Sequence record: MN563784.1
DNA: 64,000 nt
Direction: 5' to 3' (one strand)
Below the pieces are notes generated by a model, which saw only the letters and a list, made by a program, of their open reading frames with translations, was not told the origin of the DNA and ran no database searches. The number at the start of each line of letters is the position of its first letter. Position 1 is the stretch's first letter. The position numbers and the translations under genes were made by a program. Below are positions 5,360 to 61,416 of the stretch, piece after piece.

Positions 5360-6292
5360 GTGATGAGAATTATTGATTATGTACGTGAACTCGCACCAGT
5401 TACTGAACGTCGTGAACTATTAAATCAAATCCGTTCATTACGTGAAGAATATGATGCAACTCTCGCACCAATTATTGACGATGTAGGTGAAGTATTTGGT
5501 AATATGCAACTTAAATCAGATTTAGGTATGCGACTATCTACTGAACTACGGCGAGCGATTAGTTTTAATACCGAACCAATTACACTAGTACTGGATACTC
5601 TTTCAAATATTCGTGGTAGCTTTGATATGATCGAAAGCGAAATCCGACGTTTATTTGCTATTCAGTTTACTAACTCTAATCTAACCTTTGACCGTGCAAA
5701 TATGCTACGTTTTGTTGATGGTCTTAGTTTCTATATTCGTTATGGCCGTAAACTACTGCTAAATCTAATTGCACAAGAAGCAATGAAATTAGGTAAGGCT
5801 ACAGAATTAAAATCATCTCGTGCTGAGAAAGAATGGCTATACACCAATATGGCACAATTCATTACTCTGTATCCAGCAATGAGTCTTAAGACTAATGAAC
5901 TGAAACAACGCTTAAGCCGTGCATCTAGTGCTGAAGTCAATGAAGGTACTTATGATGTAGCTGTGAGTGCTCTCTCTATAGCTCAACGTGATCCACTTAA
6001 CATGGATGGCTTCTCACCTCGTCAGAACCCGTTCGTGCTATTTGGCAAGTTCTTAGCTGAGTATCAGGTTGAACGTTTTAAAGAAGCTGAGCAAGAATTC
6101 CTTGCACTTCAACTACGTTTACAAGAAATGCGGGAAATGCAAAGTAATGGTAAAGTGGATGCACGCCTACAGAAGCTTATTAAAGAGTATGAAATTCGTA
6201 TCTCTGATTATAACTATCGCCTAGGTATGATCCAAGATCGCGCATCTGAGTTCTTTGCTAACCATCGTGATCTACTATCTCTTGGTCACTAA
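5360..6292 (+). CDS. Internal head protein (gp90 position)
   Basis: 310 aa, helical/coiled-coil C-terminus, RBS AAGGA; synteny. Confidence 0.72.
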   Translation: MMRIIDYVRELAPVTERRELLNQIRSLREEYDATLAPIIDDVGEVFGNMQLKSDLGMRLSTELRRAISFNTEPITLVLDTLSNIRGSFDMIESEIRRLFAIQFTNSNLTFDRANMLRFVDGLSFYIRYGRKLLLNLIAQEAMKLGKATELKSSRAEKEWLYTNMAQFITLYPAMSLKTNELKQRLSRASSAEVNEGTYDVAVSALSIAQRDPLNMDGFSPRQNPFVLFGKFLAEYQVERFKEAEQEFLALQLRLQEMREMQSNGKVDARLQKLIKEYEIRISDYNYRLGMIQDRASEFFANHRDLLSLGH

Positions 6293-6837
6293 TGGAGGGC
6301 ATTGATATGCCAGCAACTAATGCTGTACGCCCATTTGGTCGTAATTACTCAGGTGGTCAACAACAGGCCATTTCACGGTTCACTGCTCGTCCCGGTGATC
6401 CTCAAGTTGAAGAACTATATCTTATCTTTACCAACTTTCCTGCACAAACTGCATATTGGGAATTCCATAAGAAAGTTCTAGCTTGTGCTATTCGTCTTTT
6501 TAGCGGAAACTATAATTGGTTTATTCTACAGGACAATAATAGTAATATTGATAGTTATAATTATCAATTCCTATTAGATACTGTTCGATACATTGCTACG
6601 GGTCATCGACGTATTTCAATTACCCAATGGCCAATGTTACTAGCTACTGAACCAGATGCTGGTGCACAACTCATTGAACCGCGCGCTGAAATTGCTACTC
6701 TCTTTAATGAGTTAAAATTAGATCTAGATACTGTTTCAATGATCCAGAATTGGGTTAAACACAAAAACGGTATGAATGATCTAATGTATACCCTACATCT
6801 ACTATTTGGATCTGTAGAAGTAATAGATAAGGACTGA
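6292..6837 (+). CDS. Head structural protein (gp91 position)
   Basis: 181 aa, TAATG stop-start coupling; synteny. Confidence 0.65.
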   Translation: MEGIDMPATNAVRPFGRNYSGGQQQAISRFTARPGDPQVEELYLIFTNFPAQTAYWEFHKKVLACAIRLFSGNYNWFILQDNNSNIDSYNYQFLLDTVRYIATGHRRISITQWPMLLATEPDAGAQLIEPRAEIATLFNELKLDLDTVSMIQNWVKHKNGMNDLMYTLHLLFGSVEVIDKD

Positions 6838-6846
6838 GGACTATCT

Positions 6847-8169
6847 ATGACTAATAATTCACTTAGTCATTCGGTCTTACTTGAATCAATCGACGGGGAC
6901 AGCCCCGTCGATATGATCGCTACATGCGATGGATATCTAAAAGAATTATTGCCATCAATTGAAGATATTCAAAGTAGATTAGAATGCACTGAAAAAGACA
7001 TTTTAGTTAAAACCTATACCGATGGCTTATTTCAAAAATATGCAGATAACCAAGATGTTGTTAGTGAACACATTCTAAAAACTGAGAATGTGTCATTAGA
7101 AGACCTATCTAAGACAGCACGAAATACCTGGGATGAAATGAAAAAATCCCAAGCAAAGCATCGAGATGAGTTAAAAGAGTATGCACGTGTTATTACACAA
7201 GGTAATCAACGTACTCTTGAACGAATAAACATGCTTTTAGAAAGAGCTGAAAATATTAAGCATGAGCCATTTAAGCAAGAATTAAAATTTAAAAATACTA
7301 AACGATTTAGTATTGATGGTAAATTCGAACCGACTACAGTTGATCCGATACTCATGCAAGTTAACAACTTGATAGCTTTCTATGATAAATCCCTACTCTT
7401 GTATATCCAATCTGTAGCGGATATCCTTAGGAAATTATCATTTGATGAAAAATGGACTGATAGAGCTGCACAAGACTTTAGTAAGTTTAATGTTAAGAAC
7501 TGGATGAAGGGTGCAGTACCTATTAAGAAAGATGATAGATTTAGAGTAAGTTCTACAGTTTATCGTAGTATGCCAGTTCAAGGTAATAAGACTTTATTTG
7601 GCGCAGGGCCAACTGAAACACAGACTGAAGAGATCAGGGATTGGGATTTTTTAGTAAATACTGTCCGTGATTTTGCCTTTAAGTTTTATACTATTCCTAC
7701 TATGAAGGATGCACCTGAAGGTAACAATACCTTTAAGGTTAATGATACGAGTTCAATTGGAAGACGGTTAGTATTATTAAGCGAAATGGCTAAACGTATA
7801 GATGCTAGAAAAGATTATGCAACTAAACTAGATTTTGAATTTGGTAGGTTAATGCAGTTAGCCGAGACTAATCGTCAACAAGCTGGTAGGATTCGGGCAC
7901 AACAATCTAATATGCGAAATCGTCAAGCAAAAGTTCAAGATCCGGATGCACCTGATGGCATCCCTGCTATCTCAAATATCATTAATTCAATTACATTAAT
8001 GATCAATAATGTAAGTCGCGTTGTAACAGATTTTAGTAATGCTCTTGCTGGTTTAGTCAGAGTAATGGGTCGACTAGTATTCGTGACCGAGTTAGAATTA
8101 AAAGCTTACCAGCGTCCAATTCAAAGACCTACGCAAGAACAAGTAAATAATCCCTCCCAGGTAAGGTAA
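6847..8169 (+). CDS. Head protein with cleavable propeptide (gp92 position)
   Basis: 440 aa, VSLED motif; synteny. Confidence 0.68.
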   Translation: MTNNSLSHSVLLESIDGDSPVDMIATCDGYLKELLPSIEDIQSRLECTEKDILVKTYTDGLFQKYADNQDVVSEHILKTENVSLEDLSKTARNTWDEMKKSQAKHRDELKEYARVITQGNQRTLERINMLLERAENIKHEPFKQELKFKNTKRFSIDGKFEPTTVDPILMQVNNLIAFYDKSLLLYIQSVADILRKLSFDEKWTDRAAQDFSKFNVKNWMKGAVPIKKDDRFRVSSTVYRSMPVQGNKTLFGAGPTETQTEEIRDWDFLVNTVRDFAFKFYTIPTMKDAPEGNNTFKVNDTSSIGRRLVLLSEMAKRIDARKDYATKLDFEFGRLMQLAETNRQQAGRIRAQQSNMRNRQAKVQDPDAPDGIPAISNIINSITLMINNVSRVVTDFSNALAGLVRVMGRLVFVTELELKAYQRPIQRPTQEQVNNPSQVR

Positions 8170-19652: not shown

Positions 19653-21633
<1,981 letters not shown>

Positions 21634-25660: not shown

Positions 25661-26083
25661 ATGTCAAAAGTAGTATTTCCTAATGGTCTACTAATAGCGC
25701 TCATGCAAAACTTCGATCACACTCTCGAATGTTTTGATCATGATGTTAGTGTTTTTAAAAAGGCACTCAGTGACCTAGATAATAAAATTAAAGGTGGTAT
25801 TAAGTCACTTGATAATGATTACTCTAATGCTAAAATTGTATTAGAACGCATTCTTGAAGAACTTTTTAAAAGAGGATTACATATCCCTGGGCCTTCTGGA
25901 AAAGCATTTGTCATTGAAAAAGTTCACATTGTAGATAGCACAGGTGTGGCTAAGGCATACCGTGTCAGTTACAATGATGAAAAAGCTATGCCTGAATATG
26001 TATCAGCCGATAATGTATGGGGTGCACTAATTTCATATCAAAAACGTAGTCGTAGTGCAAATCCATTCAAACCAACTGCGTGA
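25661..26083 (+). CDS. Hypothetical protein
   Basis: 140 aa, RBS AGGTG. Confidence 0.68.
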   Translation: MSKVVFPNGLLIALMQNFDHTLECFDHDVSVFKKALSDLDNKIKGGIKSLDNDYSNAKIVLERILEELFKRGLHIPGPSGKAFVIEKVHIVDSTGVAKAYRVSYNDEKAMPEYVSADNVWGALISYQKRSRSANPFKPTA

Positions 26084-33463: not shown

Positions 33464-35707
33464 ATGAGCGTACATGCCCTAAGAGAACTGTTTAAACACA
33501 AAGGCGAAAAGAATTACGAAGTCTTCTCAATGGAAGATTTCATTGGCCGCCTAGAAAGTGAAATTGGTCTAAATGACAGCGTTGTTAGTCAAGGTCGTTC
33601 CCTTATTAGCAGCATTTCACATGAAAACTTCGGTACCGTGCAAGCTACCGACATTCAAGATGCCGCTGCAATTTATAACAAAATGCAAATGCTCGTTAAC
33701 GACTATGGTTTCGAACGAGTAAGTTCCAGTGATCCTCAAGTACGTGCTCGTGAAGAACGTGTCCGTGAGAACCAAATCACTGCTGCTACCATGGCTGCTA
33801 TCGCCTGTGCTGATGAAACTAAATATATCCGTGCACTACGTGGTATTACCAAAGCTAAAGCTTCTAATGAAGATCATGTTAAGGTTGTACAGCATCAGTT
33901 CAATGGCCCTGCTGGTGGCATTCAAGTATTCGAAAATGGTGTTGGCCTAGAGAACTATAACGAGAAGTCACAGCGTGATTTCCGTGTTGTAACTATTGGT
34001 TATAACCTAGCTGCTAGCCGTCAGGATGAATTCGCTGAGCGTATCTATCCGACCACCGTTATCAACCCGATTGAAGGTGGTGTTGTTCAGGTTCTTCCTT
34101 ACATCGCTGTAATGAAAGACGTTTACCACGAAGTATCCGGCGTTAAGATGGATAACGAAGAAGTGAACATGGTAGAAGCCTATCGTGATCCTTCCATCCT
34201 CGACGACGAAAGCATTGCACTAATTCCTGCCCTAGATCCGGCTGGTTCCAATGCTGACTTCTTCGTAGACCCGGCTCTTGTTCCTCCGTACACCATCAAG
34301 AACGAGCAGAACCTAACTATCACTACTGCTCCGCTAAAAGCGAACGTACGTCTTGATCTAATGGGTAACTCCAATGCTAACCTACTCATTCAGCGTGGCA
34401 TGCTTGAAGTTTCTGACACCATTGATCCGGCTGGTCGTCTAAAGAACCTATTCGTTCTACTCGGCGGTAAAGTTGTTAAGTTCAAGGTTGACCGTCTACC
34501 TCGCGCTGTGTTCCAGCCCGATCTAGTTGGTGATACCCGGAACGCAGTTATCCGTTTCGATAGCGATGACCTTGTTGTTAGTGGCGATACCACTTTCATC
34601 GACGGTTCAGCTGATGGCGTTATTAACGACCTTAAGACTGCTAAACTAAGCCTACGTCTAAGCGTTGGTTTTGGTGGTACTATCAGCCTATCCAAAGGCG
34701 ATTCTAAGTTTGGTGCTACCGACACTTACGTCGATAAAGTTCTAAACGAAGATGGCCAGGTAATGGATAATGCTGACCCGGCTGTTAAAGCTATTCTAGA
34801 TCAGCTAACTGACCTAGCTGTTATCGGTTTCGAACTAGATACTCGCTTCACCAACACTAACCGTCGTCAGCGTGGTCACCTACTACAGACCCGTGCACTA
34901 CAGTTCCGTCATCCGATCCCGATGCACGCTCCTGTAACTCTACCGATGGACACCATGACCGATGAAGGTCCGGGTGAGGTTGTTAAAGCTCTAACTGTTA
35001 ACACCAACATCCGTAACAGCAACAACGCTGTTAAGCGCATGCTTAACTACCTTGCTCAACTACGTGAAGTTGTACACAATGGTTACAACCGTCCGAAGTT
35101 TGGTATCATCGAAGGTGCACTATCCGCTGTAATGCGTCCGACCTATCGTTACAAAGAACTAGATCTTGAGAAAGTCATCGACACCATCAAGTCTAAAGAT
35201 CGTTGGGACGACGTTTGCGCTGCGATCCTAAACTGTGTTAAAGCTGAGCTATTCCCGGCTCACCGTGATTCCAACATTGAAGCTGCCTTCCGTGTTATCT
35301 CCGGTAACCAGGATGAAACTCCGATGTATCTCTTCTGCTCCGACAAAGAGATTGCTAACTATCTAATGACTAAAGGTGACGACCGTACTCTAGGTGCTTA
35401 TCTCAAGTACGATATCGTTTCCACCAACAACCAGCTATTTGATGGTAAGCTAGTTGTAATTCCGACCCGCGCAGTACAACAAGAAAACGACATCCTCTCC
35501 TGGGGCCAGTTCTTCTACGTATCTACTGTTATCGCTGACCTACCGATCACTCGTGGTGGTCACCAGGTTACTCGCGAAATCGCGGCCATTCCGTTCAACC
35601 TACACGTCAACAACATTCCGTTCGCGCTAGAGTTCAAGATCACTGGCTTCCAGAAAGTCATGGGCGAAACTCAGTTCAACGGTAAGCTTGCTGATCTTAA
35701 GCCGTGA
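33464..35707 (+). CDS. gp120: Major capsid protein precursor
   Basis: 747 aa; propeptide with FSMED/ISHEN/VGLEN cleavage-type motifs; strongly biased codon usage; position. Confidence 0.93.
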   Translation: MSVHALRELFKHKGEKNYEVFSMEDFIGRLESEIGLNDSVVSQGRSLISSISHENFGTVQATDIQDAAAIYNKMQMLVNDYGFERVSSSDPQVRAREERVRENQITAATMAAIACADETKYIRALRGITKAKASNEDHVKVVQHQFNGPAGGIQVFENGVGLENYNEKSQRDFRVVTIGYNLAASRQDEFAERIYPTTVINPIEGGVVQVLPYIAVMKDVYHEVSGVKMDNEEVNMVEAYRDPSILDDESIALIPALDPAGSNADFFVDPALVPPYTIKNEQNLTITTAPLKANVRLDLMGNSNANLLIQRGMLEVSDTIDPAGRLKNLFVLLGGKVVKFKVDRLPRAVFQPDLVGDTRNAVIRFDSDDLVVSGDTTFIDGSADGVINDLKTAKLSLRLSVGFGGTISLSKGDSKFGATDTYVDKVLNEDGQVMDNADPAVKAILDQLTDLAVIGFELDTRFTNTNRRQRGHLLQTRALQFRHPIPMHAPVTLPMDTMTDEGPGEVVKALTVNTNIRNSNNAVKRMLNYLAQLREVVHNGYNRPKFGIIEGALSAVMRPTYRYKELDLEKVIDTIKSKDRWDDVCAAILNCVKAELFPAHRDSNIEAAFRVISGNQDETPMYLFCSDKEIANYLMTKGDDRTLGAYLKYDIVSTNNQLFDGKLVVIPTRAVQQENDILSWGQFFYVSTVIADLPITRGGHQVTREIAAIPFNLHVNNIPFALEFKITGFQKVMGETQFNGKLADLKP

Positions 35708-35788
35708 GCTGGAAAGGGTTACCGTTATCTAGAAAATGGGACTATCCGTTATTTGGAAGACGGTAATGCCCGGAAGTTAGAAGAGTAA
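35708..35788 (+). CDS. Putative stop-codon-readthrough C-terminal extension of the major capsid protein (AGKGYRYLENGTIRYLEDGNARKLEE)
   Basis: In frame with the UGA at 35705-35707; motif shared with the C-terminus of 60883-61416; ~23-bp hairpin 35716-35771; terminator only after TAA 35786-35788. Confidence 0.65.
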   Translation, partial: AGKGYRYLENGTIRYLEDGNARKLEE

Positions 35789-35797
35789 CAGACATAG

Positions 35798-35826
35798 GCC
35801 CTCCCTTCGGGGAGGGCTTTATGTTG
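35798..35826 (+). terminator. Intrinsic terminator of the capsid operon
   Basis: GCCCTCCC-TTCG-GGGAGGGC then TTTATGTTG. Confidence 0.88.
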
Positions 35827-35903: not shown

Positions 35904-36356
35904 ATGAACGTTCAATTATTTCCAGAAGTCATCGAAAGATGGCAAGATGCCCTAAGGGTATCTCTTATAGAAAAAAATACCATGGTAGATAATAAGATGT
36001 CTACCGTAGATGATGATAAATACATTAATACTTTCTTTGAAGAATTCCATCCTGTTCAGGATGCCTTTATGCCCAAAGGGCTAGAGGACTTTATTACTGA
36101 TTATGCCAAGAAAAACATTGAGGAGATCCTTCAAGAAAAACAGTTTAAGCGGGCCACCGAAAAGTTATATTGTTCGAGTGACCCGCATAAATGGCAGAAA
36201 TCAAGTAATAAGGAAAAGAGTGAATCCTTTAAGGGAAGGTCCGTACATCAAACTAAAAAGAGGCTCCCCAACATTGTAGATTTGGAGGCCGTTGTGATTA
36301 AGGTAGATTTCAATGGTAACACTAAAAATTGCGGGGCTTACTCAAGTATCAGTTAA
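35904..36356 (+). CDS. Hypothetical protein (gp121 position)
   Basis: 150 aa, RBS AGGT. Confidence 0.62.
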   Translation: MNVQLFPEVIERWQDALRVSLIEKNTMVDNKMSTVDDDKYINTFFEEFHPVQDAFMPKGLEDFITDYAKKNIEEILQEKQFKRATEKLYCSSDPHKWQKSSNKEKSESFKGRSVHQTKKRLPNIVDLEAVVIKVDFNGNTKNCGAYSSIS

Positions 36357-37395
36357 GCCTACTATCGATCACCCGTATGATAAGAAATCGGGAACTGCAT
36401 ACACTAAGGGTGATCCATACGCTAATTGGAATCTCCCTGTCTCACGTTTTGTTGAGTATCGGAATGAATCATTTCATCGTATTACTGTAGTCGATTCATC
36501 TGGTCACGCTATCAATATTGGGACATCCCGTAAGTATGTAATGTCTAATAGACTAGTAGTTAAGGTCATTTACCGATGGAGTGGTGATGATAGTTTTAAC
36601 TATGAAGTTATGGCTAAATCTATTCCAGGTTTTACACCTGAGGAAATGTTAGAATATATTCAGTCATTTAGTCGACAGACATTCGATCAGTTTAATAACC
36701 AGCTATCTGAGATTACTATTTGGTATTCAATTGACTTATCAAAACTAGTAGATCAGTATCATGGTGGTTGGATTCAGAGTTTAGGTATCCAAGTATTTAA
36801 AACTGAGTATAGTCAGTATTTTGAATTTTATCCAAATAGAAATATTAGTCCTCCTGGTTACAGCGGACTTAGTCCAGAAGAAGAAGCACTTTCTAATCAA
36901 GTATGGAATGAAACATATTCTTTAACGTATAATACTGACATCAATAAACCAGATAAATTGTTTTATGTAATGGCTGGCAGAATTATGGCCATTGAGTCAA
37001 TCTACAATCCATCATTAGATCCTGGTCTTATTGTTAATATCCGTGGTAAGCATGGATGTATTAGTCATAATGGCGAAAAGAGATATGTAATACCTCCTGA
37101 ACAGTTCCATGAAAATGGTTTCTTTAGAACACATGAAGAAGCTGCTGCAATGGTTGGAATTAAAGATAAGAAAGTTATTGAACGTCTTAAGACTGCACTC
37201 TTAACAGCGGCTGATATTAAGGAAAGGGAAGCCCAGGAAAAAGCAGCTGGTACGTTTGATAAAGAATTCAAACCAAAAGATGTTGTATTGATTCATGGTC
37301 TAAAATGGGGTGATCTAAACTCCATTGCCTCTGATCTAGTATCATCCATTAAAATTGTAGGTTCACTGATGGATTTAATTTTGCCAAAAGTTTAG
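36313..37395 (+). CDS. Conserved hypothetical protein (gp122 position)
   Basis: 360 aa; synteny. Confidence 0.68.
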   Translation: MVTLKIAGLTQVSVKPTIDHPYDKKSGTAYTKGDPYANWNLPVSRFVEYRNESFHRITVVDSSGHAINIGTSRKYVMSNRLVVKVIYRWSGDDSFNYEVMAKSIPGFTPEEMLEYIQSFSRQTFDQFNNQLSEITIWYSIDLSKLVDQYHGGWIQSLGIQVFKTEYSQYFEFYPNRNISPPGYSGLSPEEEALSNQVWNETYSLTYNTDINKPDKLFYVMAGRIMAIESIYNPSLDPGLIVNIRGKHGCISHNGEKRYVIPPEQFHENGFFRTHEEAAAMVGIKDKKVIERLKTALLTAADIKEREAQEKAAGTFDKEFKPKDVVLIHGLKWGDLNSIASDLVSSIKIVGSLMDLILPKV

Positions 37396-37404
37396 GAGTT
37401 TATA

Positions 37405-39036
37405 ATGCCGGATCCATTTCTAATTGAAAAGATTCGTGAAAATACGCCTTGCATGAATCCAACACTAGCAAATGGTATCACAGTCGAACACACCATGACT
37501 CGTGATCCAAATACTGGTGTTAATATGACCAGGCGTTATATTGATTCTTTATTTGATATCAGTTCAGTTCTATTTCCCGATGGCTTCAAATATGAAGGCA
37601 ATCGTGCATGTACACCGCTTAAGCATTTTGAAGAGATTACTCGGGAATATAATGCTAAGCGTATTGCCAATATTGCTCCAACTGACATGTACATGATTGA
37701 CCTAATGTTTAGTTATAAAGGGGAAATGCTTTATCCTCGTCCAATGTTGTTACCAGCTTTTAAGAGAGGCAATATGGTAACTATCAATGGTGCGAAATAT
37801 ATCGGTTCACCAGTATTAACTGATGTTGGGTTCTCTGTACTTAATGATAGCATCTTCATCCCGTTTCGTCGTACTAAGCTAACCTTTAAACAAACTGACC
37901 ACCATTACATGTGCAATGGTCAGCGTAAAATCATGTATGTGATCTGGTCACAGATTCACAATGAAATGGCTAAGCGTACTAAACGAGATCTGGATAATCG
38001 ACCACATATTGAGTCATGTTTAGCTCATTATTTCTTCTGTCAGTTTGGAGTAACTCAAACTTTCAAACAATGGGCTAATGTAGATGTTAAGTGTGGACTG
38101 CTGTCTGATTTTCCTGAAGAAGAATATCCACGTGAAAAGTGGAATATTTATTCCAGTGCAACATTAAAAGGCAAACATCCCACCGGTGAAATGGTTCTTG
38201 TTATACCTCGTCATCAAGAATCTATTTTTGCCACACGACTTATCGCTGGTTTCTGGTATGTGGTCGATGCATTTCCAATGCGGTTTACTCGACCTGAATA
38301 TGTAGATAGTACCAACTTATGGCGTGTTATCCTAGGTCACATGGTGTTTGGTGATTTTGAGCACCAAGGTAAAGTAGAGGAAAACATTGATTCACACCTA
38401 CACAGTTTCTGTAATTCACTAGACGAAATGACTATTGAAGAACTTAAAACAGTTGGTGTCAATGTAAGTACTATTTGGGAACTTCTTTACGAGATCATGA
38501 CTAGTTTGGCTCATCATCTTTATGCTACTGATATTGATGAAACTAGTATGTATGGTAAAAGGTTAACAGTACTGCATTACTTGATGTCAGAGTTTAACTA
38601 TGCTGTAAGTATGTTTGGTTATATGTTCCAGTCTAGGCGTGATCGTGAATGGACTGTACAAGAGCTAAACGAAGGTTTAAAACGTTCTTTTAAACTACAG
38701 ACAGCTATTAAACGATTAACAGTGGACCATGGTGAACTCGATACAATGAGTAATCCAAACTCCAGTATGTTGATTAAAGGGACATCTATCCTAGTTACAC
38801 AGGATCGCGCTAAAACAGCTAAGGCTCATAATAAGTCTCTAATCAATGACTCATCTAGGATTATTCACGCATCTATTGCTGAGGTAGGTCAATATAAAAA
38901 CCAACCTAAGAACAACCCGGATGGTCGAGGTAGGCTTAATATGTATACCAAAGTGGGTCCAACTGGACTAGTTGAACGTCGTGAAGAAGTGCGTGAAATA
39001 ATTGACAACGCTCAATTAATGTTCCGTGCAAAATAA
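37405..39036 (+). CDS. gp123: Non-virion RNA polymerase subunit, N-terminal part of split beta
   Basis: 543 aa starting MPDPFLIEKIRENTPCMNP; LPAFKRGNMVTINGAKY resembles RNAP beta region; position. Confidence 0.82.
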   Translation: MPDPFLIEKIRENTPCMNPTLANGITVEHTMTRDPNTGVNMTRRYIDSLFDISSVLFPDGFKYEGNRACTPLKHFEEITREYNAKRIANIAPTDMYMIDLMFSYKGEMLYPRPMLLPAFKRGNMVTINGAKYIGSPVLTDVGFSVLNDSIFIPFRRTKLTFKQTDHHYMCNGQRKIMYVIWSQIHNEMAKRTKRDLDNRPHIESCLAHYFFCQFGVTQTFKQWANVDVKCGLLSDFPEEEYPREKWNIYSSATLKGKHPTGEMVLVIPRHQESIFATRLIAGFWYVVDAFPMRFTRPEYVDSTNLWRVILGHMVFGDFEHQGKVEENIDSHLHSFCNSLDEMTIEELKTVGVNVSTIWELLYEIMTSLAHHLYATDIDETSMYGKRLTVLHYLMSEFNYAVSMFGYMFQSRRDREWTVQELNEGLKRSFKLQTAIKRLTVDHGELDTMSNPNSSMLIKGTSILVTQDRAKTAKAHNKSLINDSSRIIHASIAEVGQYKNQPKNNPDGRGRLNMYTKVGPTGLVERREEVREIIDNAQLMFRAK

Positions 39037-42466: not shown

Positions 42467-43342
<876 letters not shown>

Positions 43343-45550: not shown

Positions 45551-48241
<2,691 letters not shown>

Positions 48242-55180: not shown

Positions 55181-56571
55181 TGATTACTTTTTTACCATTA
55201 GATCTAAAAGCTAAATTAGCTTCTAATTACATTGTAGATGAGGAACACACACTCATTCAAGTCGCTAATAAAACGCACCGTGTACTGATATGTACACATG
55301 GTGGTTTCTATACAAAGGACTTTAATCTACGTGATAAGAAGACTGGTTTATCTTTAAATAAAGATCAATATAAAACAACCTACCTTTATTCACAGTTATC
55401 TGAAATGACTGGTTTAGAAGTAATGGGTATTGTTGTAGTAACTGATCCTAAAGTTAGTCCTAATGTCCAAGTTACATATAGAGCAGTTGGTGGTTTCTTT
55501 AGTATTTCAGCATTAGAACTTAAAGCTGTTTTTGATAAACTTGAATTAGATGAATTAAGTTTCACTTGGGATGATATTATTGGTAAACCCGATGCATATC
55601 CGCCTGCACCCCATGGTCATGAATATTGGCAGATTTATGGCACCGATACAATGGTAACCGAATTAAACCGAATAGCACACGCTTATCGGGTCGGTAGAAG
55701 TGCTATGGATAATGCTGCTGATGATTATTATAAAGCTTATCTCAGTGATGCAAAAACTGCTGTGGACGATTATAGAGATCGAGTTACAGCACACTTAACT
55801 GATTATAATAATCCGCATGCCGATGATCGATTCAAGTTAATTCCACCGCTTGATAAGATATCTAACTGGGGTTTTGCTACCGAAGCTGAGTCAGTTAATA
55901 GAAATGTAAATAATAAATACATGCCAATTGGTGGTATTTATCGTATTCTTAATATCGATACATTAGCTAAACTTGCAGCGCATATTAAAAACTTTAATAA
56001 CCCGCATGTTGTTACAGCTGAACAAGTTGGATCATATACCAAACCAGTAATGGATTCTAAAATAGCTCCATTGTTAGGTATCAATGAACAAGCAGCTAAC
56101 GCAACTACTATTGGTGCTACTACCAATAGTCAGGGTTATCCAGTTGCTGGAACAGGTAAGGTATATCAGAATTTCTGGAATGATGTTCGAAAAGATATTC
56201 CAGCTGAAGAAGTAACTAGCGGTGTATTTAAATGGGGTGCATTAGGTAAAGGTAATGCATCAATATTAAATGACCCTGAAAGATATTATCTAGCAAGCGA
56301 TGGTACTTGGCAAGACTGGGTTGAAGCTTTTAAAGAGTGGAACAAAGATAAGATTAAAGCCATTACCTTAGGTCAGGTAAATAGTGAAGCAGAAGCATTA
56401 AACACGTTAAATACGATGTTTACAGATAATACCAAATATCCTGAAGGCACTTACGCTGTTGTAGGTGTTAGAACTAATACCCCCTTTGAAGCCTATTATT
56501 ACCAGCAATATGTAGCAGTTAGAAATAATGGTACATGGCGTTGGATGATTCGAGCTGGAGCACTTGTATAA
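55180..56571 (+). CDS. gp131-family tail fibre paralog (gp135 position)
   Basis: Start moved to ATG 55180 (TAATG coupling); LPLDL start; NPH repeats. Confidence 0.75.
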   Translation: MITFLPLDLKAKLASNYIVDEEHTLIQVANKTHRVLICTHGGFYTKDFNLRDKKTGLSLNKDQYKTTYLYSQLSEMTGLEVMGIVVVTDPKVSPNVQVTYRAVGGFFSISALELKAVFDKLELDELSFTWDDIIGKPDAYPPAPHGHEYWQIYGTDTMVTELNRIAHAYRVGRSAMDNAADDYYKAYLSDAKTAVDDYRDRVTAHLTDYNNPHADDRFKLIPPLDKISNWGFATEAESVNRNVNNKYMPIGGIYRILNIDTLAKLAAHIKNFNNPHVVTAEQVGSYTKPVMDSKIAPLLGINEQAANATTIGATTNSQGYPVAGTGKVYQNFWNDVRKDIPAEEVTSGVFKWGALGKGNASILNDPERYYLASDGTWQDWVEAFKEWNKDKIKAITLGQVNSEAEALNTLNTMFTDNTKYPEGTYAVVGVRTNTPFEAYYYQQYVAVRNNGTWRWMIRAGALV

Positions 56572-57173
56572 TGAATAATCCGTTATCACTCCAAGAACTA
56601 TCTTTAGCTACTGCGCCTACTGAAGATAAAGTAAAAGTACTATTAATGTTTAACCGTACTTCTGAGGTATTCCTACAAAGCGTAGGCTATCTACCTTTAG
56701 ATGCATTCGATGCTAAGTCACGTGAGCACACCATTTTTGTTGAAGCCGAAATGGGTACTTATGATGTAGTCGTAAGTAATACACCTGGTAAACAACCTAC
56801 ACTTTCCGATTGGAAGATTGTTCCTAAAGAAGAAGCGCCACAAGTGATTACTGAAGATCACTTAAATAGTAAAGTGGCCTACAAAATTACTGAACGCTAT
56901 CCAGTGACTGAGCAAATTAATATCCTTGCACGTGCAATTAAACAGCTAGCTGAAAAATATGGTCAAGAGTTAGATGAACTAGAAGAAATGCTTGATTATA
57001 TTGATCTTGTTAAACGAACTAATCGCGCGCATAAGGAGGCCCTAATTGAGAGCCCAGACGTTATCTATAAATCCAGGGAAGATCTCGACGCTGAGAAAGC
57101 ACATCGATATGCAGGTGGCCTGCATGAGCTTATCGGCCCACGAAAGATCGACCAAGGACGTGTTTTCAGCTGA
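56571..57173 (+). CDS. Possible tail fibre assembly chaperone (gp136 position)
   Basis: Start moved to ATG 56571 (TAATG coupling); KITERYPVTEQINIL resembles fibre-assembly proteins (inference). Confidence 0.55.
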   Translation: MNNPLSLQELSLATAPTEDKVKVLLMFNRTSEVFLQSVGYLPLDAFDAKSREHTIFVEAEMGTYDVVVSNTPGKQPTLSDWKIVPKEEAPQVITEDHLNSKVAYKITERYPVTEQINILARAIKQLAEKYGQELDELEEMLDYIDLVKRTNRAHKEALIESPDVIYKSREDLDAEKAHRYAGGLHELIGPRKIDQGRVFS

Positions 57174-60882: not shown

Positions 60883-61416
60883 ATGCAGGATATCTTTCCG
60901 TATGACATGGCATCGAGGAATGCGCTAGTAAAACTTGCGCGGGATGATTTAAAAATAAACTTCAAACCAGAAACAGTTACATTTGAAGATATGTTTTTTA
61001 GTCCAACCACGATTGAGCCTGGACGTACATTTATTGAAATGATCGACATTACTACTGACATTAAGTACATGTTAACTTACCGTCGGTTAGATTTTGCTGA
61101 TCCACGAGCTATTGGTGAAGGATCTATCCTTAAGATAGTTGGTACTTTAACACCTAAAGCGATTGCTGAAGAAATTAACCGTTCACGAGGTTGGAAGCTT
61201 GGACCAGATGATATTTCATTCGATACAACACCAATCAATGCAACTACGGATATTGTTCCATACACGATAGTAGCTATGTCGAGTAGTTATGCTTACTATG
61301 GTGAATGTAATATACTAATTCAACGTATTGATGATACGTCAGATACTATCCGACTATTAGAGAATGGTGCAGCACGTTATCTAGAAAATGGTCAAATCCG
61401 TTATCTAGAAAGTTAA
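60883..61416 (+). CDS. Virion protein with YRRLDF module and C-terminal triple R(L/Y)LE(NG) repeat (gp143 position)
   Basis: Ends TIRLLENGAARYLENGQIRYLES. Confidence 0.7.
   Translation: MQDIFPYDMASRNALVKLARDDLKINFKPETVTFEDMFFSPTTIEPGRTFIEMIDITTDIKYMLTYRRLDFADPRAIGEGSILKIVGTLTPKAIAEEINRSRGWKLGPDDISFDTTPINATTDIVPYTIVAMSSSYAYYGECNILIQRIDDTSDTIRLLENGAARYLENGQIRYLES

What the first reader, a model, noticed from the sequence alone, without database searches (positions are those of the whole stretch)
35702..35826. Candidate programmed UGA readthrough of the major capsid gene that appends an RYLE(N/D)G-repeat tag
Seen: (1) after the capsid stop (CCG-TGA, 35705-35707) the same frame continues for 26 sense codons, AGKGYRYLENGTIRYLEDGNARKLEE, to TAA 35786-35788. 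(2) This peptide carries the same repeat as the C-terminus of the gp143-position protein 25 kb away (RLLENGAARYLENGQIRYLES). (3) The terminator and its ACATA leader come right after the second stop, whereas most other terminators here sit within about 10-30 nt of the gene's stop. (4) There is no in-frame start codon or RBS, so only readthrough can express the peptide. Established: leaky UGA readthrough makes Qbeta A1 from the coat gene, and recoding-extended capsid isoforms exist (T7 10B by frameshift). Inference: a minority of capsid subunits carry a docking tag for a fibre or decoration protein. I know of no description of this for phiKZ gp120.
Basis: partly seen in the sequence, partly recalled or inferred. 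Interest (0 to 1): 0.92.

Follow-up and report, generated by a model that had tools for sequence, protein, structure and literature searches.

The report
Hidden readthrough tail on phiKZ capsid
The major capsid gene of the giant Pseudomonas phage phiKZ and of two dozen relatives always ends in the leaky stop codon TGA, followed in frame by a short conserved protein-coding tail, so a minority of capsid subunits very probably carry an extra tag that nobody has described.

Summary
The window is phage phiKZ. In detail: gp120 (33464-35704) ends in TGA (35705-35707). Twenty-six sense codons follow in frame (35708-35785), then TAA, then the terminator 8 nt later.

In phiKZ alone this is not unusual: 24% of gene-like ORFs here have at least 26 open codons after their stop. 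Comparison with relatives decides it.
- In 24 distinct relatives (phiKZ, PhiPA3, PA1C, 201phi2-1, Phabio, Psa21, Noxifer, Viktualia, metagenomic contigs) the capsid stop is always TGA. It is followed by 24-30 in-frame codons carrying R-x-x-E-x-G units spaced eight residues apart.
- Invariant Arg, Glu and Gly use 2-5 synonymous codons. pN/pS is 0.53 in frame against 0.9-1.1 out of frame (p = 2e-6).
- All 18 relatives without the tail end in TAA, including about three independent losses.
- None of 120 capsid cluster representatives has the tail fused in frame.

The tail is therefore coding and reachable only by decoding UGA. No protein evidence exists yet.

The same tail ends every member of the gp143 family. 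gp143 is a published holin regulator.

No description was found in the searchable literature. It is a new variant of coat-protein readthrough.

The parts
33464..35704 (+). Major capsid protein gp120, sense codons (747 aa)
   Evidence: ORF list. RefSeq annotates it as PHIKZ120, major head protein. It matches phrog_3231 with E 3e-263. The published structure models residues 164-747, and the C-terminal arm 728-747 lies at the capsomer centre (PMC11297242).
35705..35707 (+). TGA stop of the capsid gene, the proposed leaky (recoded) codon; preceded by CCG (Pro) and followed by G
   Evidence: The stop is TGA in 24 of 24 distinct tail-bearing relatives. Meanwhile the preceding codon takes 9 forms (Pro 10, Ala 10, Gly 3, Val 1), and the next base is A in 15, G in 8 and C in 1. 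The second stop is free to vary: TAA 15, TGA 6, TAG 3. All 18 relatives without the tail end in TAA.
35708..35785 (+). In-frame post-stop extension of 26 codons: a 5-residue linker, two 8-residue R-x-x-E-[DN]-G-x-x units (35723-35746 and 35747-35770) and a final R-x-L-E unit (35771-35782)
   Evidence: Translation. The extension is conserved as a 24-30-codon open frame in 24 relatives. Invariant Arg, Glu and Gly columns are encoded by 2-5 synonymous codons. pN/pS is 0.52 in frame against 0.91 and 1.07 in the shifted frames. Across 10 independent pairs, 98 of 254 differences are synonymous where 25% is expected, p 2e-6. The other five frames mostly contain stops.
35786..35788 (+). TAA, the second stop, which ends the extended product
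   Evidence: In eight near-identical phiKZ-type genomes the codon before it is itself a stop. That shortens the tail by one non-conserved residue and leaves the motif whole.
35716..35771 (+). Predicted RNA hairpin inside the extension, starting 8 nt after the UGA; possible readthrough stimulator (inferred)
   Evidence: MFE is -28 to -30 kcal/mol with z -3.0 to -4.7. In the 12-sequence subgroup the stem 35716-35718 and 35720-35726 pairs with 35759-35765 and 35769-35771. There 91.7% of cells pair, against 86% in shuffles and 38-58% in slid controls, and 4 pairs show compensatory changes. The extension RNA folds better than gp143 tail RNA that encodes the same repeats (mean z -1.8 against -0.4, p 0.006). 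A second subgroup folds differently.
35792..35826 (+). Intrinsic terminator: CATA, a 10-bp GC-rich stem-loop (35796-35819), then a T-rich tail
   Evidence: It is the top terminator-like hit in the scan. The same arrangement follows the second stop in all relatives. The motif type is published for phiKZ and 201phi2-1 (PMC11512511).
60883..61416 (+). gp143, whose last 21 residues (61351-61413) form the same kind of 8-residue-unit tail
   Evidence: gp143 matches phrog_2935 with E 3e-46, and the capsid extension weakly matches the tail end of that profile (positions 157-179, E 0.08). All 46 full-length homologues end in the same tail architecture. In the AF2 model (pLDDT 92.6) the tail scores 76-85 and shows beta bridges spaced eight residues apart. 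The best fold match is phiKZ gp127 (9xqd), E 4e-7. gp143 is published as a regulator of the holin gp142 (PMC12894885).

Best explanation
The 78 nt after the capsid gene's TGA are protein-coding. They are expressed only when a ribosome finishing gp120 decodes UGA as a sense codon instead of terminating. That adds about 27 residues before the TAA, so each infection makes mostly the 747-aa capsid protein plus a minority isoform with a short C-terminal tail.

Shown here:
- The tail is under purifying selection in the capsid's frame.
- TGA is invariant wherever the tail exists, and the stop is TAA wherever the tail has been lost.
- No conserved start codon precedes the tail.
- phiKZ's seven annotated tRNA genes, all re-found by ARAGORN, include no suppressor, Trp or Sec tRNA.
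- No lineage among those sampled has fused the tail with a sense codon.

Inferred:
- Decoding is by a near-cognate host tRNA, with Trp the usual reader of UGA in bacteria.
- Efficiency is of the order of a few percent. That would mean tens of copies among the 1620 capsid subunits per particle.
- A Pro, Ala or Gly last residue, a purine after the stop and a hairpin starting 8 nt downstream help to set the level.
- The gp120 C-terminal arm sits at the centre of each capsomer. It forms a six-helix bundle in hexamers and contacts the outer protein gp244 in pentons. The tail should therefore emerge at capsomer centres, probably on the outside, and only as a minority species, because six tails could not share that site.
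- The tail is a small three-strand beta unit that serves as a binding tag. The lysis regulator gp143 carries the same module, so the two probably share a partner or bind each other.
For: The anatomy is.
- Relatives: 24 of 24 distinct relatives have TGA plus a 24-30-codon in-frame tail.
- Codon use: invariant Arg, Glu and Gly columns use several synonymous codons. Gly uses all four, and Arg uses both CGN and AGR.
- Selection: pN/pS is 0.52-0.63 in frame against 0.91 and 1.07 out of frame. The excess of synonymous changes in 10 independent pairs gives p 2e-6.
- Stop and tail go together: 24 relatives have TGA with the tail and 18 have TAA without it (Fisher 3e-12, not corrected for phylogeny). 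The tree implies about three independent losses, each with TAA.
- The second stop varies freely.
- None of 120 representative capsid proteins carries the motif fused in frame.
- The terminator follows the second stop, not the first.
- ARAGORN finds only Thr, Asn (two), Asp, Met, Pro and Leu tRNAs in phiKZ.
- The tail is a genuine translated module in the gp143 family.
- The position of the C-terminal arm comes from PMC11297242.
- There is support for a hairpin.
Against: - There is no direct evidence that the extended protein exists. No peptide from the tail appears in the searchable literature.
- Two cryo-EM papers model gp120 to residue 747 and mention no extra C-terminal density or readthrough. 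A minority species would be averaged out by icosahedral reconstruction, so this is weak evidence against.
- Selection on the tail is moderate (pN/pS about 0.5), and the tail evolves much faster than the capsid core.
- The tail has been lost about three times, so it is dispensable in some lineages.
- The base after the stop is A or G, which is not the weakest known termination context in E. coli (from my own knowledge).
- The RNA structure is not the same in the two subgroups and could partly be a by-product of the repeat's codons.
Confidence: 0.85

Rival explanations
1. The conserved element is an RNA element in the 3' untranslated region, for example a stabilising or terminator-associated hairpin. 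It is never translated, and the open frame is incidental.
For: The region folds stably (z -3 to -4.7 in phiKZ, negative in all 20 relatives). One stem has some compensatory changes. The region lies directly before the terminator.
Against: - An RNA-only element does not explain a frame kept open in 24 lineages while the other frames are closed.
- It does not explain invariant amino acids encoded by many synonymous codons, or frame-specific pN/pS.
- It does not explain the invariant TGA against TAA in tail-less relatives.
- It does not explain the match to a translated tail in the gp143 family.
- The predicted structure differs between subgroups.
- No Rfam family matches.
Confidence: 0.05
2. The UGA is decoded as selenocysteine through the host SelB pathway, with the downstream hairpin acting as a bacterial SECIS element.
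For: There is a UGA followed by a hairpin that starts 8 nt downstream, with an apical loop about 35 nt from the UGA in phiKZ. Pseudomonas has the selenocysteine machinery (from my own knowledge).
Against: - The apical hairpin differs in sequence, loop and position among relatives, and between the two subgroups. A SelB-binding element should be conserved.
- No Rfam match was found. I do not know whether Rfam holds a suitable bacterial SECIS model.
- No selenoprotein is known among capsid proteins of tailed phages (from my own knowledge).
Confidence: 0.03
3. The tail is made as a separate micro-protein, by reinitiation or a non-canonical start after termination at TGA, and is not an extension of gp120.
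For: A purine-rich, Shine-Dalgarno-like stretch follows the TGA in most relatives. phiKZ has an in-frame TTG at tail codon 16. In L028 an ATG lies two codons after the TGA.
Against: - No in-frame ATG, GTG or TTG is conserved, and the first tail codon takes 11 forms.
- The purine-rich stretch has no start codon at a usable distance in most relatives.
- An independent ORF would not require the upstream stop to be TGA, nor require it to be in frame in 24 of 24 cases.
Confidence: 0.03
4. The tail is a decaying remnant of a once longer capsid C-terminus or of a copied gp143 tail, and the open frame is chance.
For: In phiKZ alone a 26-codon open stretch is unremarkable (24% of genes). The DNA is 30 of 36 identical to the gp143 tail.
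Against: - The tail is kept in 24 lineages whose tail DNA has diverged to near saturation at synonymous sites (pS 0.5-0.6), yet the motif is retained.
- The closest other species has a capsid C-terminal 200 residues 90% identical to phiKZ's. Its tail sequence is very different, but the motif skeleton is the same.
- Where the tail really has decayed, one deletion has removed most of it and the stop is TAA (L076).
- Similarity between a genome's own capsid tail and its own gp143 tail is not elevated.
Confidence: 0.02
5. TGA is generally suppressed or reassigned late in infection, by a phage tRNA or a code change, so the capsid case is not specific.
For: Stop-codon recoding is known in other phage groups (from my own knowledge; PMC9523058 appeared).
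Against: - phiKZ's seven tRNAs have the anticodons UGU, GUU (two), GUC, CAU, UGG and UAA. None reads UGA.
- Nine of 58 gene-like ORFs in the window end in TGA, including structural genes, and no long ORF is interrupted by TGA.
- Seven of the nine TGA-ending ORFs have another stop within 0-5 codons.
Confidence: 0.02

Closest known systems
Q-beta (Allolevivirus) A1 readthrough protein
   Same: The coat gene ends in a leaky UGA. Occasional decoding of it gives a minor C-terminally extended coat subunit that is built into the virion. The ratio is set by translation and not by a second gene. (From my own knowledge.)
   Different: Q-beta is a small ssRNA phage with an unrelated coat fold. Its extension is a folded domain of about 200 residues that is needed for infection. 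Here the carrier is the capsid protein of a 280-kb dsDNA phage, the tail is only 24-30 residues of 8-residue repeats, it is lost in some lineages, and the product has not been demonstrated. The tail matched no Pfam family.
Capsid isoforms made by frameshifting in dsDNA phages (T7 10A/10B; Listeria phages PSA and A118)
   Same: A minority of major capsid subunits carries an extra C-terminal segment made by translational recoding at the end of the gene. (From my own knowledge.)
   Different: Those cases change reading frame at a slippery site before the stop. Here the tail is in the zero frame directly after the stop, so the event is stop-codon readthrough.
Ig-like domains appended to phage structural proteins by recoding (Fraser et al. 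2006)
   Same: One relative, L028, has TGA followed in frame by 203 codons that begin with a Big_2 Ig-like domain (E 4e-9). This suggests the capsid stop in this family is used more than once to append a module.
   Different: The phiKZ tail is not an Ig domain. In L028 an ATG two codons after the TGA leaves separate initiation possible.
C-terminal tail of the gp143 family (phrog_2935; holin regulator, PMC12894885)
   Same: The architecture is the same: two R-x-x-E-x-G-x-x units and a final R-x-L-E at the extreme C-terminus. There is a weak profile match to the tail positions.
   Different: In gp143 the tail is part of the ordinary ORF and follows a globular domain with a gp127-like fold. It has its own conserved ending and is also present in phages whose capsid lacks the tail. 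No role for the tail itself has been published.
Readthrough stimulated by a downstream structure after a spacer of about 8 nt, as known in eukaryotic viruses and retroelements
   Same: A stable stem begins 8 nt after the UGA in the phiKZ subgroup, with some covariation.
   Different: As far as I know, such stimulators have not been established for bacterial stop-codon readthrough. The structure here is only predicted and differs between subgroups.

Membership tests
Programmed stop-codon readthrough of a coat gene (Q-beta A1 type, by mechanism) | The coat gene ends in a leaky stop codon that is conserved as that codon among relatives | tested here: met
   The stop is TGA in 24 of 24 tail-bearing relatives, although the flanking codons vary. 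Window-wide stop usage is TAA 43, TGA 9, TAG 6.
Programmed stop-codon readthrough of a coat gene (Q-beta A1 type, by mechanism) | A downstream in-frame ORF without its own start, under purifying selection in that frame | tested here: met
   Searches show the open frame and the selection. No start codon is conserved.
Programmed stop-codon readthrough of a coat gene (Q-beta A1 type, by mechanism) | The extended protein is detected, with a defined ratio to the short form | not testable with these tools
   No proteomic or ribosome-profiling data were accessible. The tail peptides have no occurrence in the paper library.
Programmed stop-codon readthrough of a coat gene (Q-beta A1 type, by mechanism) | Homology of the extension to the A1 readthrough domain (membership by descent) | tested here: not met
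   The tail peptides match no Pfam family. The carrier belongs to the PhiKZ_MCP family PF25620. This is an analogy of mechanism only.
Frameshift-extended capsid isoforms (T7 10B type) | The extension is encoded in the -1 or +1 frame and reached at a slippery site | tested here: not met
   The extension is in the zero frame directly after the stop. The shifted frames contain stops and show no coding signal.
Bacterial selenocysteine recoding | A conserved SECIS hairpin at a fixed distance after the UGA | tested here: inconclusive
   A hairpin is present, but its apical part is not conserved across relatives. There is no Rfam hit.
Stop-codon reassignment or phage-encoded suppressor tRNA | A tRNA that reads UGA, and in-frame TGAs inside many genes | tested here: not met
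   The seven phiKZ tRNAs include none that reads UGA. ARAGORN itself covered only the window and 230-280 kb, about 41% of the genome. The RefSeq tRNA tags t01-t07 all lie in that part. ORFs in the window are intact under the standard code.
gp143-type tail module (phrog_2935 C-terminus) | At least two R-x-x-E-x-G-x-x units followed by R-x-L-E at the extreme C-terminus | tested here: met
   The pattern is present in the capsid tail. Arg, Glu and Gly columns are occupied in 19-20 of 20 sequences. The profile match is weak (E 0.08).

The most novel reading that the evidence does not exclude
The readthrough tail of the capsid protein and the identical-type tail of the holin regulator gp143 may be two ends of one circuit. 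Either gp143 docks onto capsids through the shared tail, or both tails compete for one receptor. Either way, the amount or assembly state of capsids would feed into the timing of holin triggering and lysis. This would be a translationally metered link between morphogenesis and lysis in nucleus-forming jumbo phages.
Probability: 0.12. Interest if true: 0.95.

Novelty: new variant of a known kind. Interest (0 to 1): 0.8.

Why it matters
phiKZ is the model nucleus-forming jumbo phage. Its capsid has been solved to near-atomic resolution and its genes have been mapped by transposon mutagenesis, yet this coding segment is unannotated in the records I inspected.

If confirmed, it would be the first conserved stop-codon readthrough I know of in the major capsid gene of a tailed dsDNA phage. 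It would add a hidden, sub-stoichiometric component at capsomer centres, which symmetry-averaged cryo-EM cannot see.

It would also give a natural system for studying how bacteria set a UGA readthrough level. The system comes with its own comparison set: 24 natural variants of the signal and about three natural losses.

The shared tail with a lysis regulator makes a link between capsid production and lysis timing directly testable.

It is a caution for annotation as well: conserved coding sequence can sit behind the stop of a very well-studied gene.

Tried and rejected
- Significance in phiKZ alone: rejected as evidence. Twenty-four percent of ORFs have an equally long open stretch after their stop.
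- Recent duplication or gene conversion between gp143 and the capsid tail in phiKZ: rejected. Own-genome similarity is not special.
- Known RNA family: none in Rfam. All hits are far below threshold and driven by the terminator.
- Pfam match for the tail: none.
- Solved structure for gp143: only weak sequence hits (9gb2 gp66, E 3e-3; 9xqd gp127, E 0.06). The fold search confirmed only gp127.
- Sense-codon fusions among 120 capsid cluster representatives: none found.
- Literature: three searches for capsid readthrough in phiKZ or jumbo phages, one for the tail peptides, and reading of both phiKZ structure papers found nothing on this. The hit in PMC3091744 concerns the tail-chaperone frameshift.
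- Further copies of the motif: none in the 114 kb of phiKZ scanned by pattern, and only two places per phiKZ genome by tblastn.
- My first guess at the position of the Noxifer capsid was wrong. It was found later through its protein.
- Goslar's 28-codon post-TGA frame has no relatives to compare with.
- The tail could not be folded on gp120, because the tools take no protein read through a stop and the tail alone is under 30 residues.

Slip to report. None was put into a tool call or used as evidence.
Full report
**Identity and anatomy**

The window is Pseudomonas phage phiKZ (window position + 84804 = NC_004629 position). The ORF 33464..35707 is PHIKZ120, the 747-aa major head protein. It ends CCG-TGA. 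The same frame then runs for 26 sense codons (35708-35785) to TAA at 35786-35788. A strong intrinsic terminator (stem 35796-35819) starts 8 nt after the TAA, which is 89 nt after the TGA. Other strong terminators in 26-46 kb start 10-21 nt after their gene's stop.

**Is it more than chance?**

Not in phiKZ alone. Of 58 gene-like ORFs in the window, 24% have at least 26 open codons after their stop, and 9 end in TGA. The case rests on relatives. I collected capsid loci from GenBank phages, IMG/VR, metagenomes and a gene-position index.

- In 24 distinct sequences the capsid stop is TGA and is followed in frame by 24-30 sense codons, then a second stop, then the terminator. These sequences include phiKZ, a second species whose capsid C-terminal 200 residues are 90% identical to phiKZ's, PhiPA3, PA1C, 201phi2-1, Phabio, Psa21, Noxifer, Viktualia and 15 uncultured contigs.
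- The first stop never varies. The codon before it takes 9 forms, the codon after it takes 11, and the second stop is TAA in 15, TGA in 6 and TAG in 3.

**The tail is protein-coding**

- In a 20-sequence alignment, three Arg, two Glu and two Gly columns are occupied in 19-20 of 20 sequences. Each is encoded by 2-5 synonymous codons: Gly by all four, Arg by both CGN and AGR.
- pN/pS is 0.52 in the capsid frame, against 0.91 and 1.07 when the same bases are read in the other two frames.
- In ten phylogenetically independent pairs, 98 of 254 differences are synonymous where 25% is expected (binomial p 2e-6; pN/pS 0.53).
- The other five frames mostly contain stops.
- Constraint is moderate. The tail changes much faster than the capsid core, but the motif skeleton persists even where almost every other residue differs.

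**Stop codon and tail go together**

- Eighteen distinct relatives lack the tail, and all end in TAA. A neighbour-joining tree of the capsid proteins places three of these groups inside or beside tail-bearing clades, which implies about three independent losses.
- One of them, L076, sits next to two tail-bearing contigs. It has one deletion of about 59 nt that removes most of the tail, and its stop is TAA.
- Conversely, none of 120 cluster representatives of the capsid family has the motif fused to the ORF, so no sampled lineage has replaced TGA with a sense codon. Selection seems to keep the tail rare rather than constant.
- Within phiKZ-type genomes the only variant seen is a stop at the last, non-conserved tail codon. 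It leaves the motif intact.

**How it is expressed**

- No in-frame start is conserved.
- phiKZ's seven tRNAs are Thr, Asn (two), Asp, Met, Pro and Leu. None reads UGA.
- TGA ends other genes normally.

The only economical route is occasional decoding of the capsid UGA by a host tRNA. Near-cognate Trp is the usual case in bacteria, which I state from my own knowledge. Possible tuning elements, all inferred, are these:

- The last residue is Pro or Ala in 20 of 24 and Gly in 3.
- The next base is a purine in 23 of 24.
- An RNA hairpin lies inside the tail.

In phiKZ the hairpin has -28 to -30 kcal/mol and z -3 to -4.7. In the 12-sequence phiKZ/PhiPA3/201phi2-1 subgroup, a stem that starts 8 nt after the UGA pairs in 91.7% of cells, against 86% in shuffles and 38-58% in slid controls. 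It has four compensatory pairs. The tail RNA also folds better than gp143 tail RNA that encodes the same repeats (p 0.006). The other subgroup folds differently, so I treat the structure as suggestive. No Rfam family matches.

**What the tail is**

After a short linker come two units of R-x-x-E-[DN]-G-x-x and a final R-x-L-E. The same architecture ends gp143 (60883..61416) and all 46 full-length homologues found, down to about 31-37% identity. This includes phages whose capsid has no tail.

- AlphaFold2 models gp143 at pLDDT 92.6. The tail scores 76-85 and shows beta bridges spaced eight residues apart, which I read as a small three-strand beta unit.
- The globular part matches the fold of phiKZ gp127, a protein of the outer baseplate region (9xqd, E 4e-7).
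- gp143 is published as a cytoplasmic regulator of the holin gp142 and is non-essential by transposon sequencing (PMC12894885; 10.1101/2025.11.23.690004).
- Its 201phi2-1 homologue was recorded as a virion protein by mass spectrometry.

**Where the tail would sit**

The capsid structure paper models gp120 to its last residue. The C-terminal arm (728-747) forms a six-helix bundle around a 9-A pore at the centre of each hexamer. In pentons it contacts the outer protein gp244 (PMC11297242). A tail would therefore emerge at capsomer centres, probably outside. Six tails could hardly share that site, which fits the absence of constitutive fusions. With 1620 subunits, a readthrough of a few percent would give tens of tails per particle. 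That figure is an inference.

**Function**

Function is unknown. I favour a binding tag that shares a partner with gp143 or binds gp143 itself.

**Novelty**

Neither phiKZ structure paper, nor the lysis and transposon papers, nor full-text searches mention capsid readthrough or the tail peptides. Mechanistically it resembles Q-beta A1, and it differs from the frameshift isoforms of T7 and the Listeria phages.

**Limits**

- There is no protein-level evidence.
- The Fisher test ignores phylogeny.
- ARAGORN covered only part of the phiKZ genome, although all annotated tRNAs lie in that part.

I also report a slip.

Noticed in passing
L028:3754-4368 (IMG/VR contig 3300043122_000192): This capsid gene lies in the otherwise TAA-ending subclade. 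It ends in TGA and is followed in frame by 203 codons that begin with a Pfam Big_2 Ig-like domain (E 4e-9). An ATG lies two codons after the TGA, so readthrough and separate initiation cannot be told apart.
   Followed up: partly
L067:986-1075 (Escherichia phage Goslar, NC_048170.1): The Goslar capsid gene also ends in TGA, with 28 open in-frame codons of unrelated sequence and then TGA. No relatives were available for comparison (only Goslar itself matched), so this may be chance.
   Followed up: partly
L076 (metagenome contig RCUK01000188.1): This looks like a natural loss. It is a close relative of two tail-bearing contigs, has one deletion of about 59 nt that removes most of the tail, and ends in TAA. 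The remaining 3' end of the tail region is still recognisable before the terminator.
   Followed up: yes
window, all TGA-ending ORFs (e.g. 19653..20234, 25661..26083, 42467..43339, 45560..48241, 56535..57173): Seven of the nine TGA-ending gene-like ORFs have another in-frame stop within 0-5 codons, against a median of 7.5 for all ORFs. This is possible buffering of UGA leakiness, but the numbers are too small to test.
   Followed up: no
window 6292..6837 and 6847..8169; window 36313..37395 and 37405..39036: Two adjacent gene pairs are in the same frame and separated only by a stop plus 3 codons: TGA in the first pair and TAG in the second (gp122/gp123). Readthrough would fuse each pair. One third of neighbouring genes are in frame by chance.
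   Followed up: no
window 60883..61416 and 42467..43339: gp143 shares the N-terminal half of the DUF7941 (PF25613) fold with gp127, a protein of the outer baseplate region. The second half of that fold is replaced by the repeat tail. This sits oddly beside its published role as a cytoplasmic holin regulator.
   Followed up: partly
window 35792-35826 and the equivalent sites in L003-L092: The terminators after the capsid tail share flanks (CATA before the stem, TTTATG after it) that extend the stem with A-U pairs. The stems themselves vary by compensatory changes (7 of 12 predicted pairs).
   Followed up: partly
L011:2978-3076 (Pseudomonas phage Viktualia, PV037725.1): The deposited annotation has a 32-aa hypothetical CDS that covers the tail region in a different frame from the capsid. 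It is probably a spurious call caused by the unannotated coding signal.
   Followed up: no
P0094-P0096, P0098 (JGI names): Several metagenomic capsid homologues carry the source name 'virulence-associated protein VapD'. This looks like a mis-annotation of a PhiKZ_MCP family protein.
   Followed up: no
L071 (201phi2-1, EU197055.1 157800-160600): The GenBank notes list the homologues of the spanin, holin (gp142), gp143 and endolysin (gp144) genes as detected in virions by mass spectrometry. The lysis cassette products therefore co-purify with particles in that phage.
   Followed up: no
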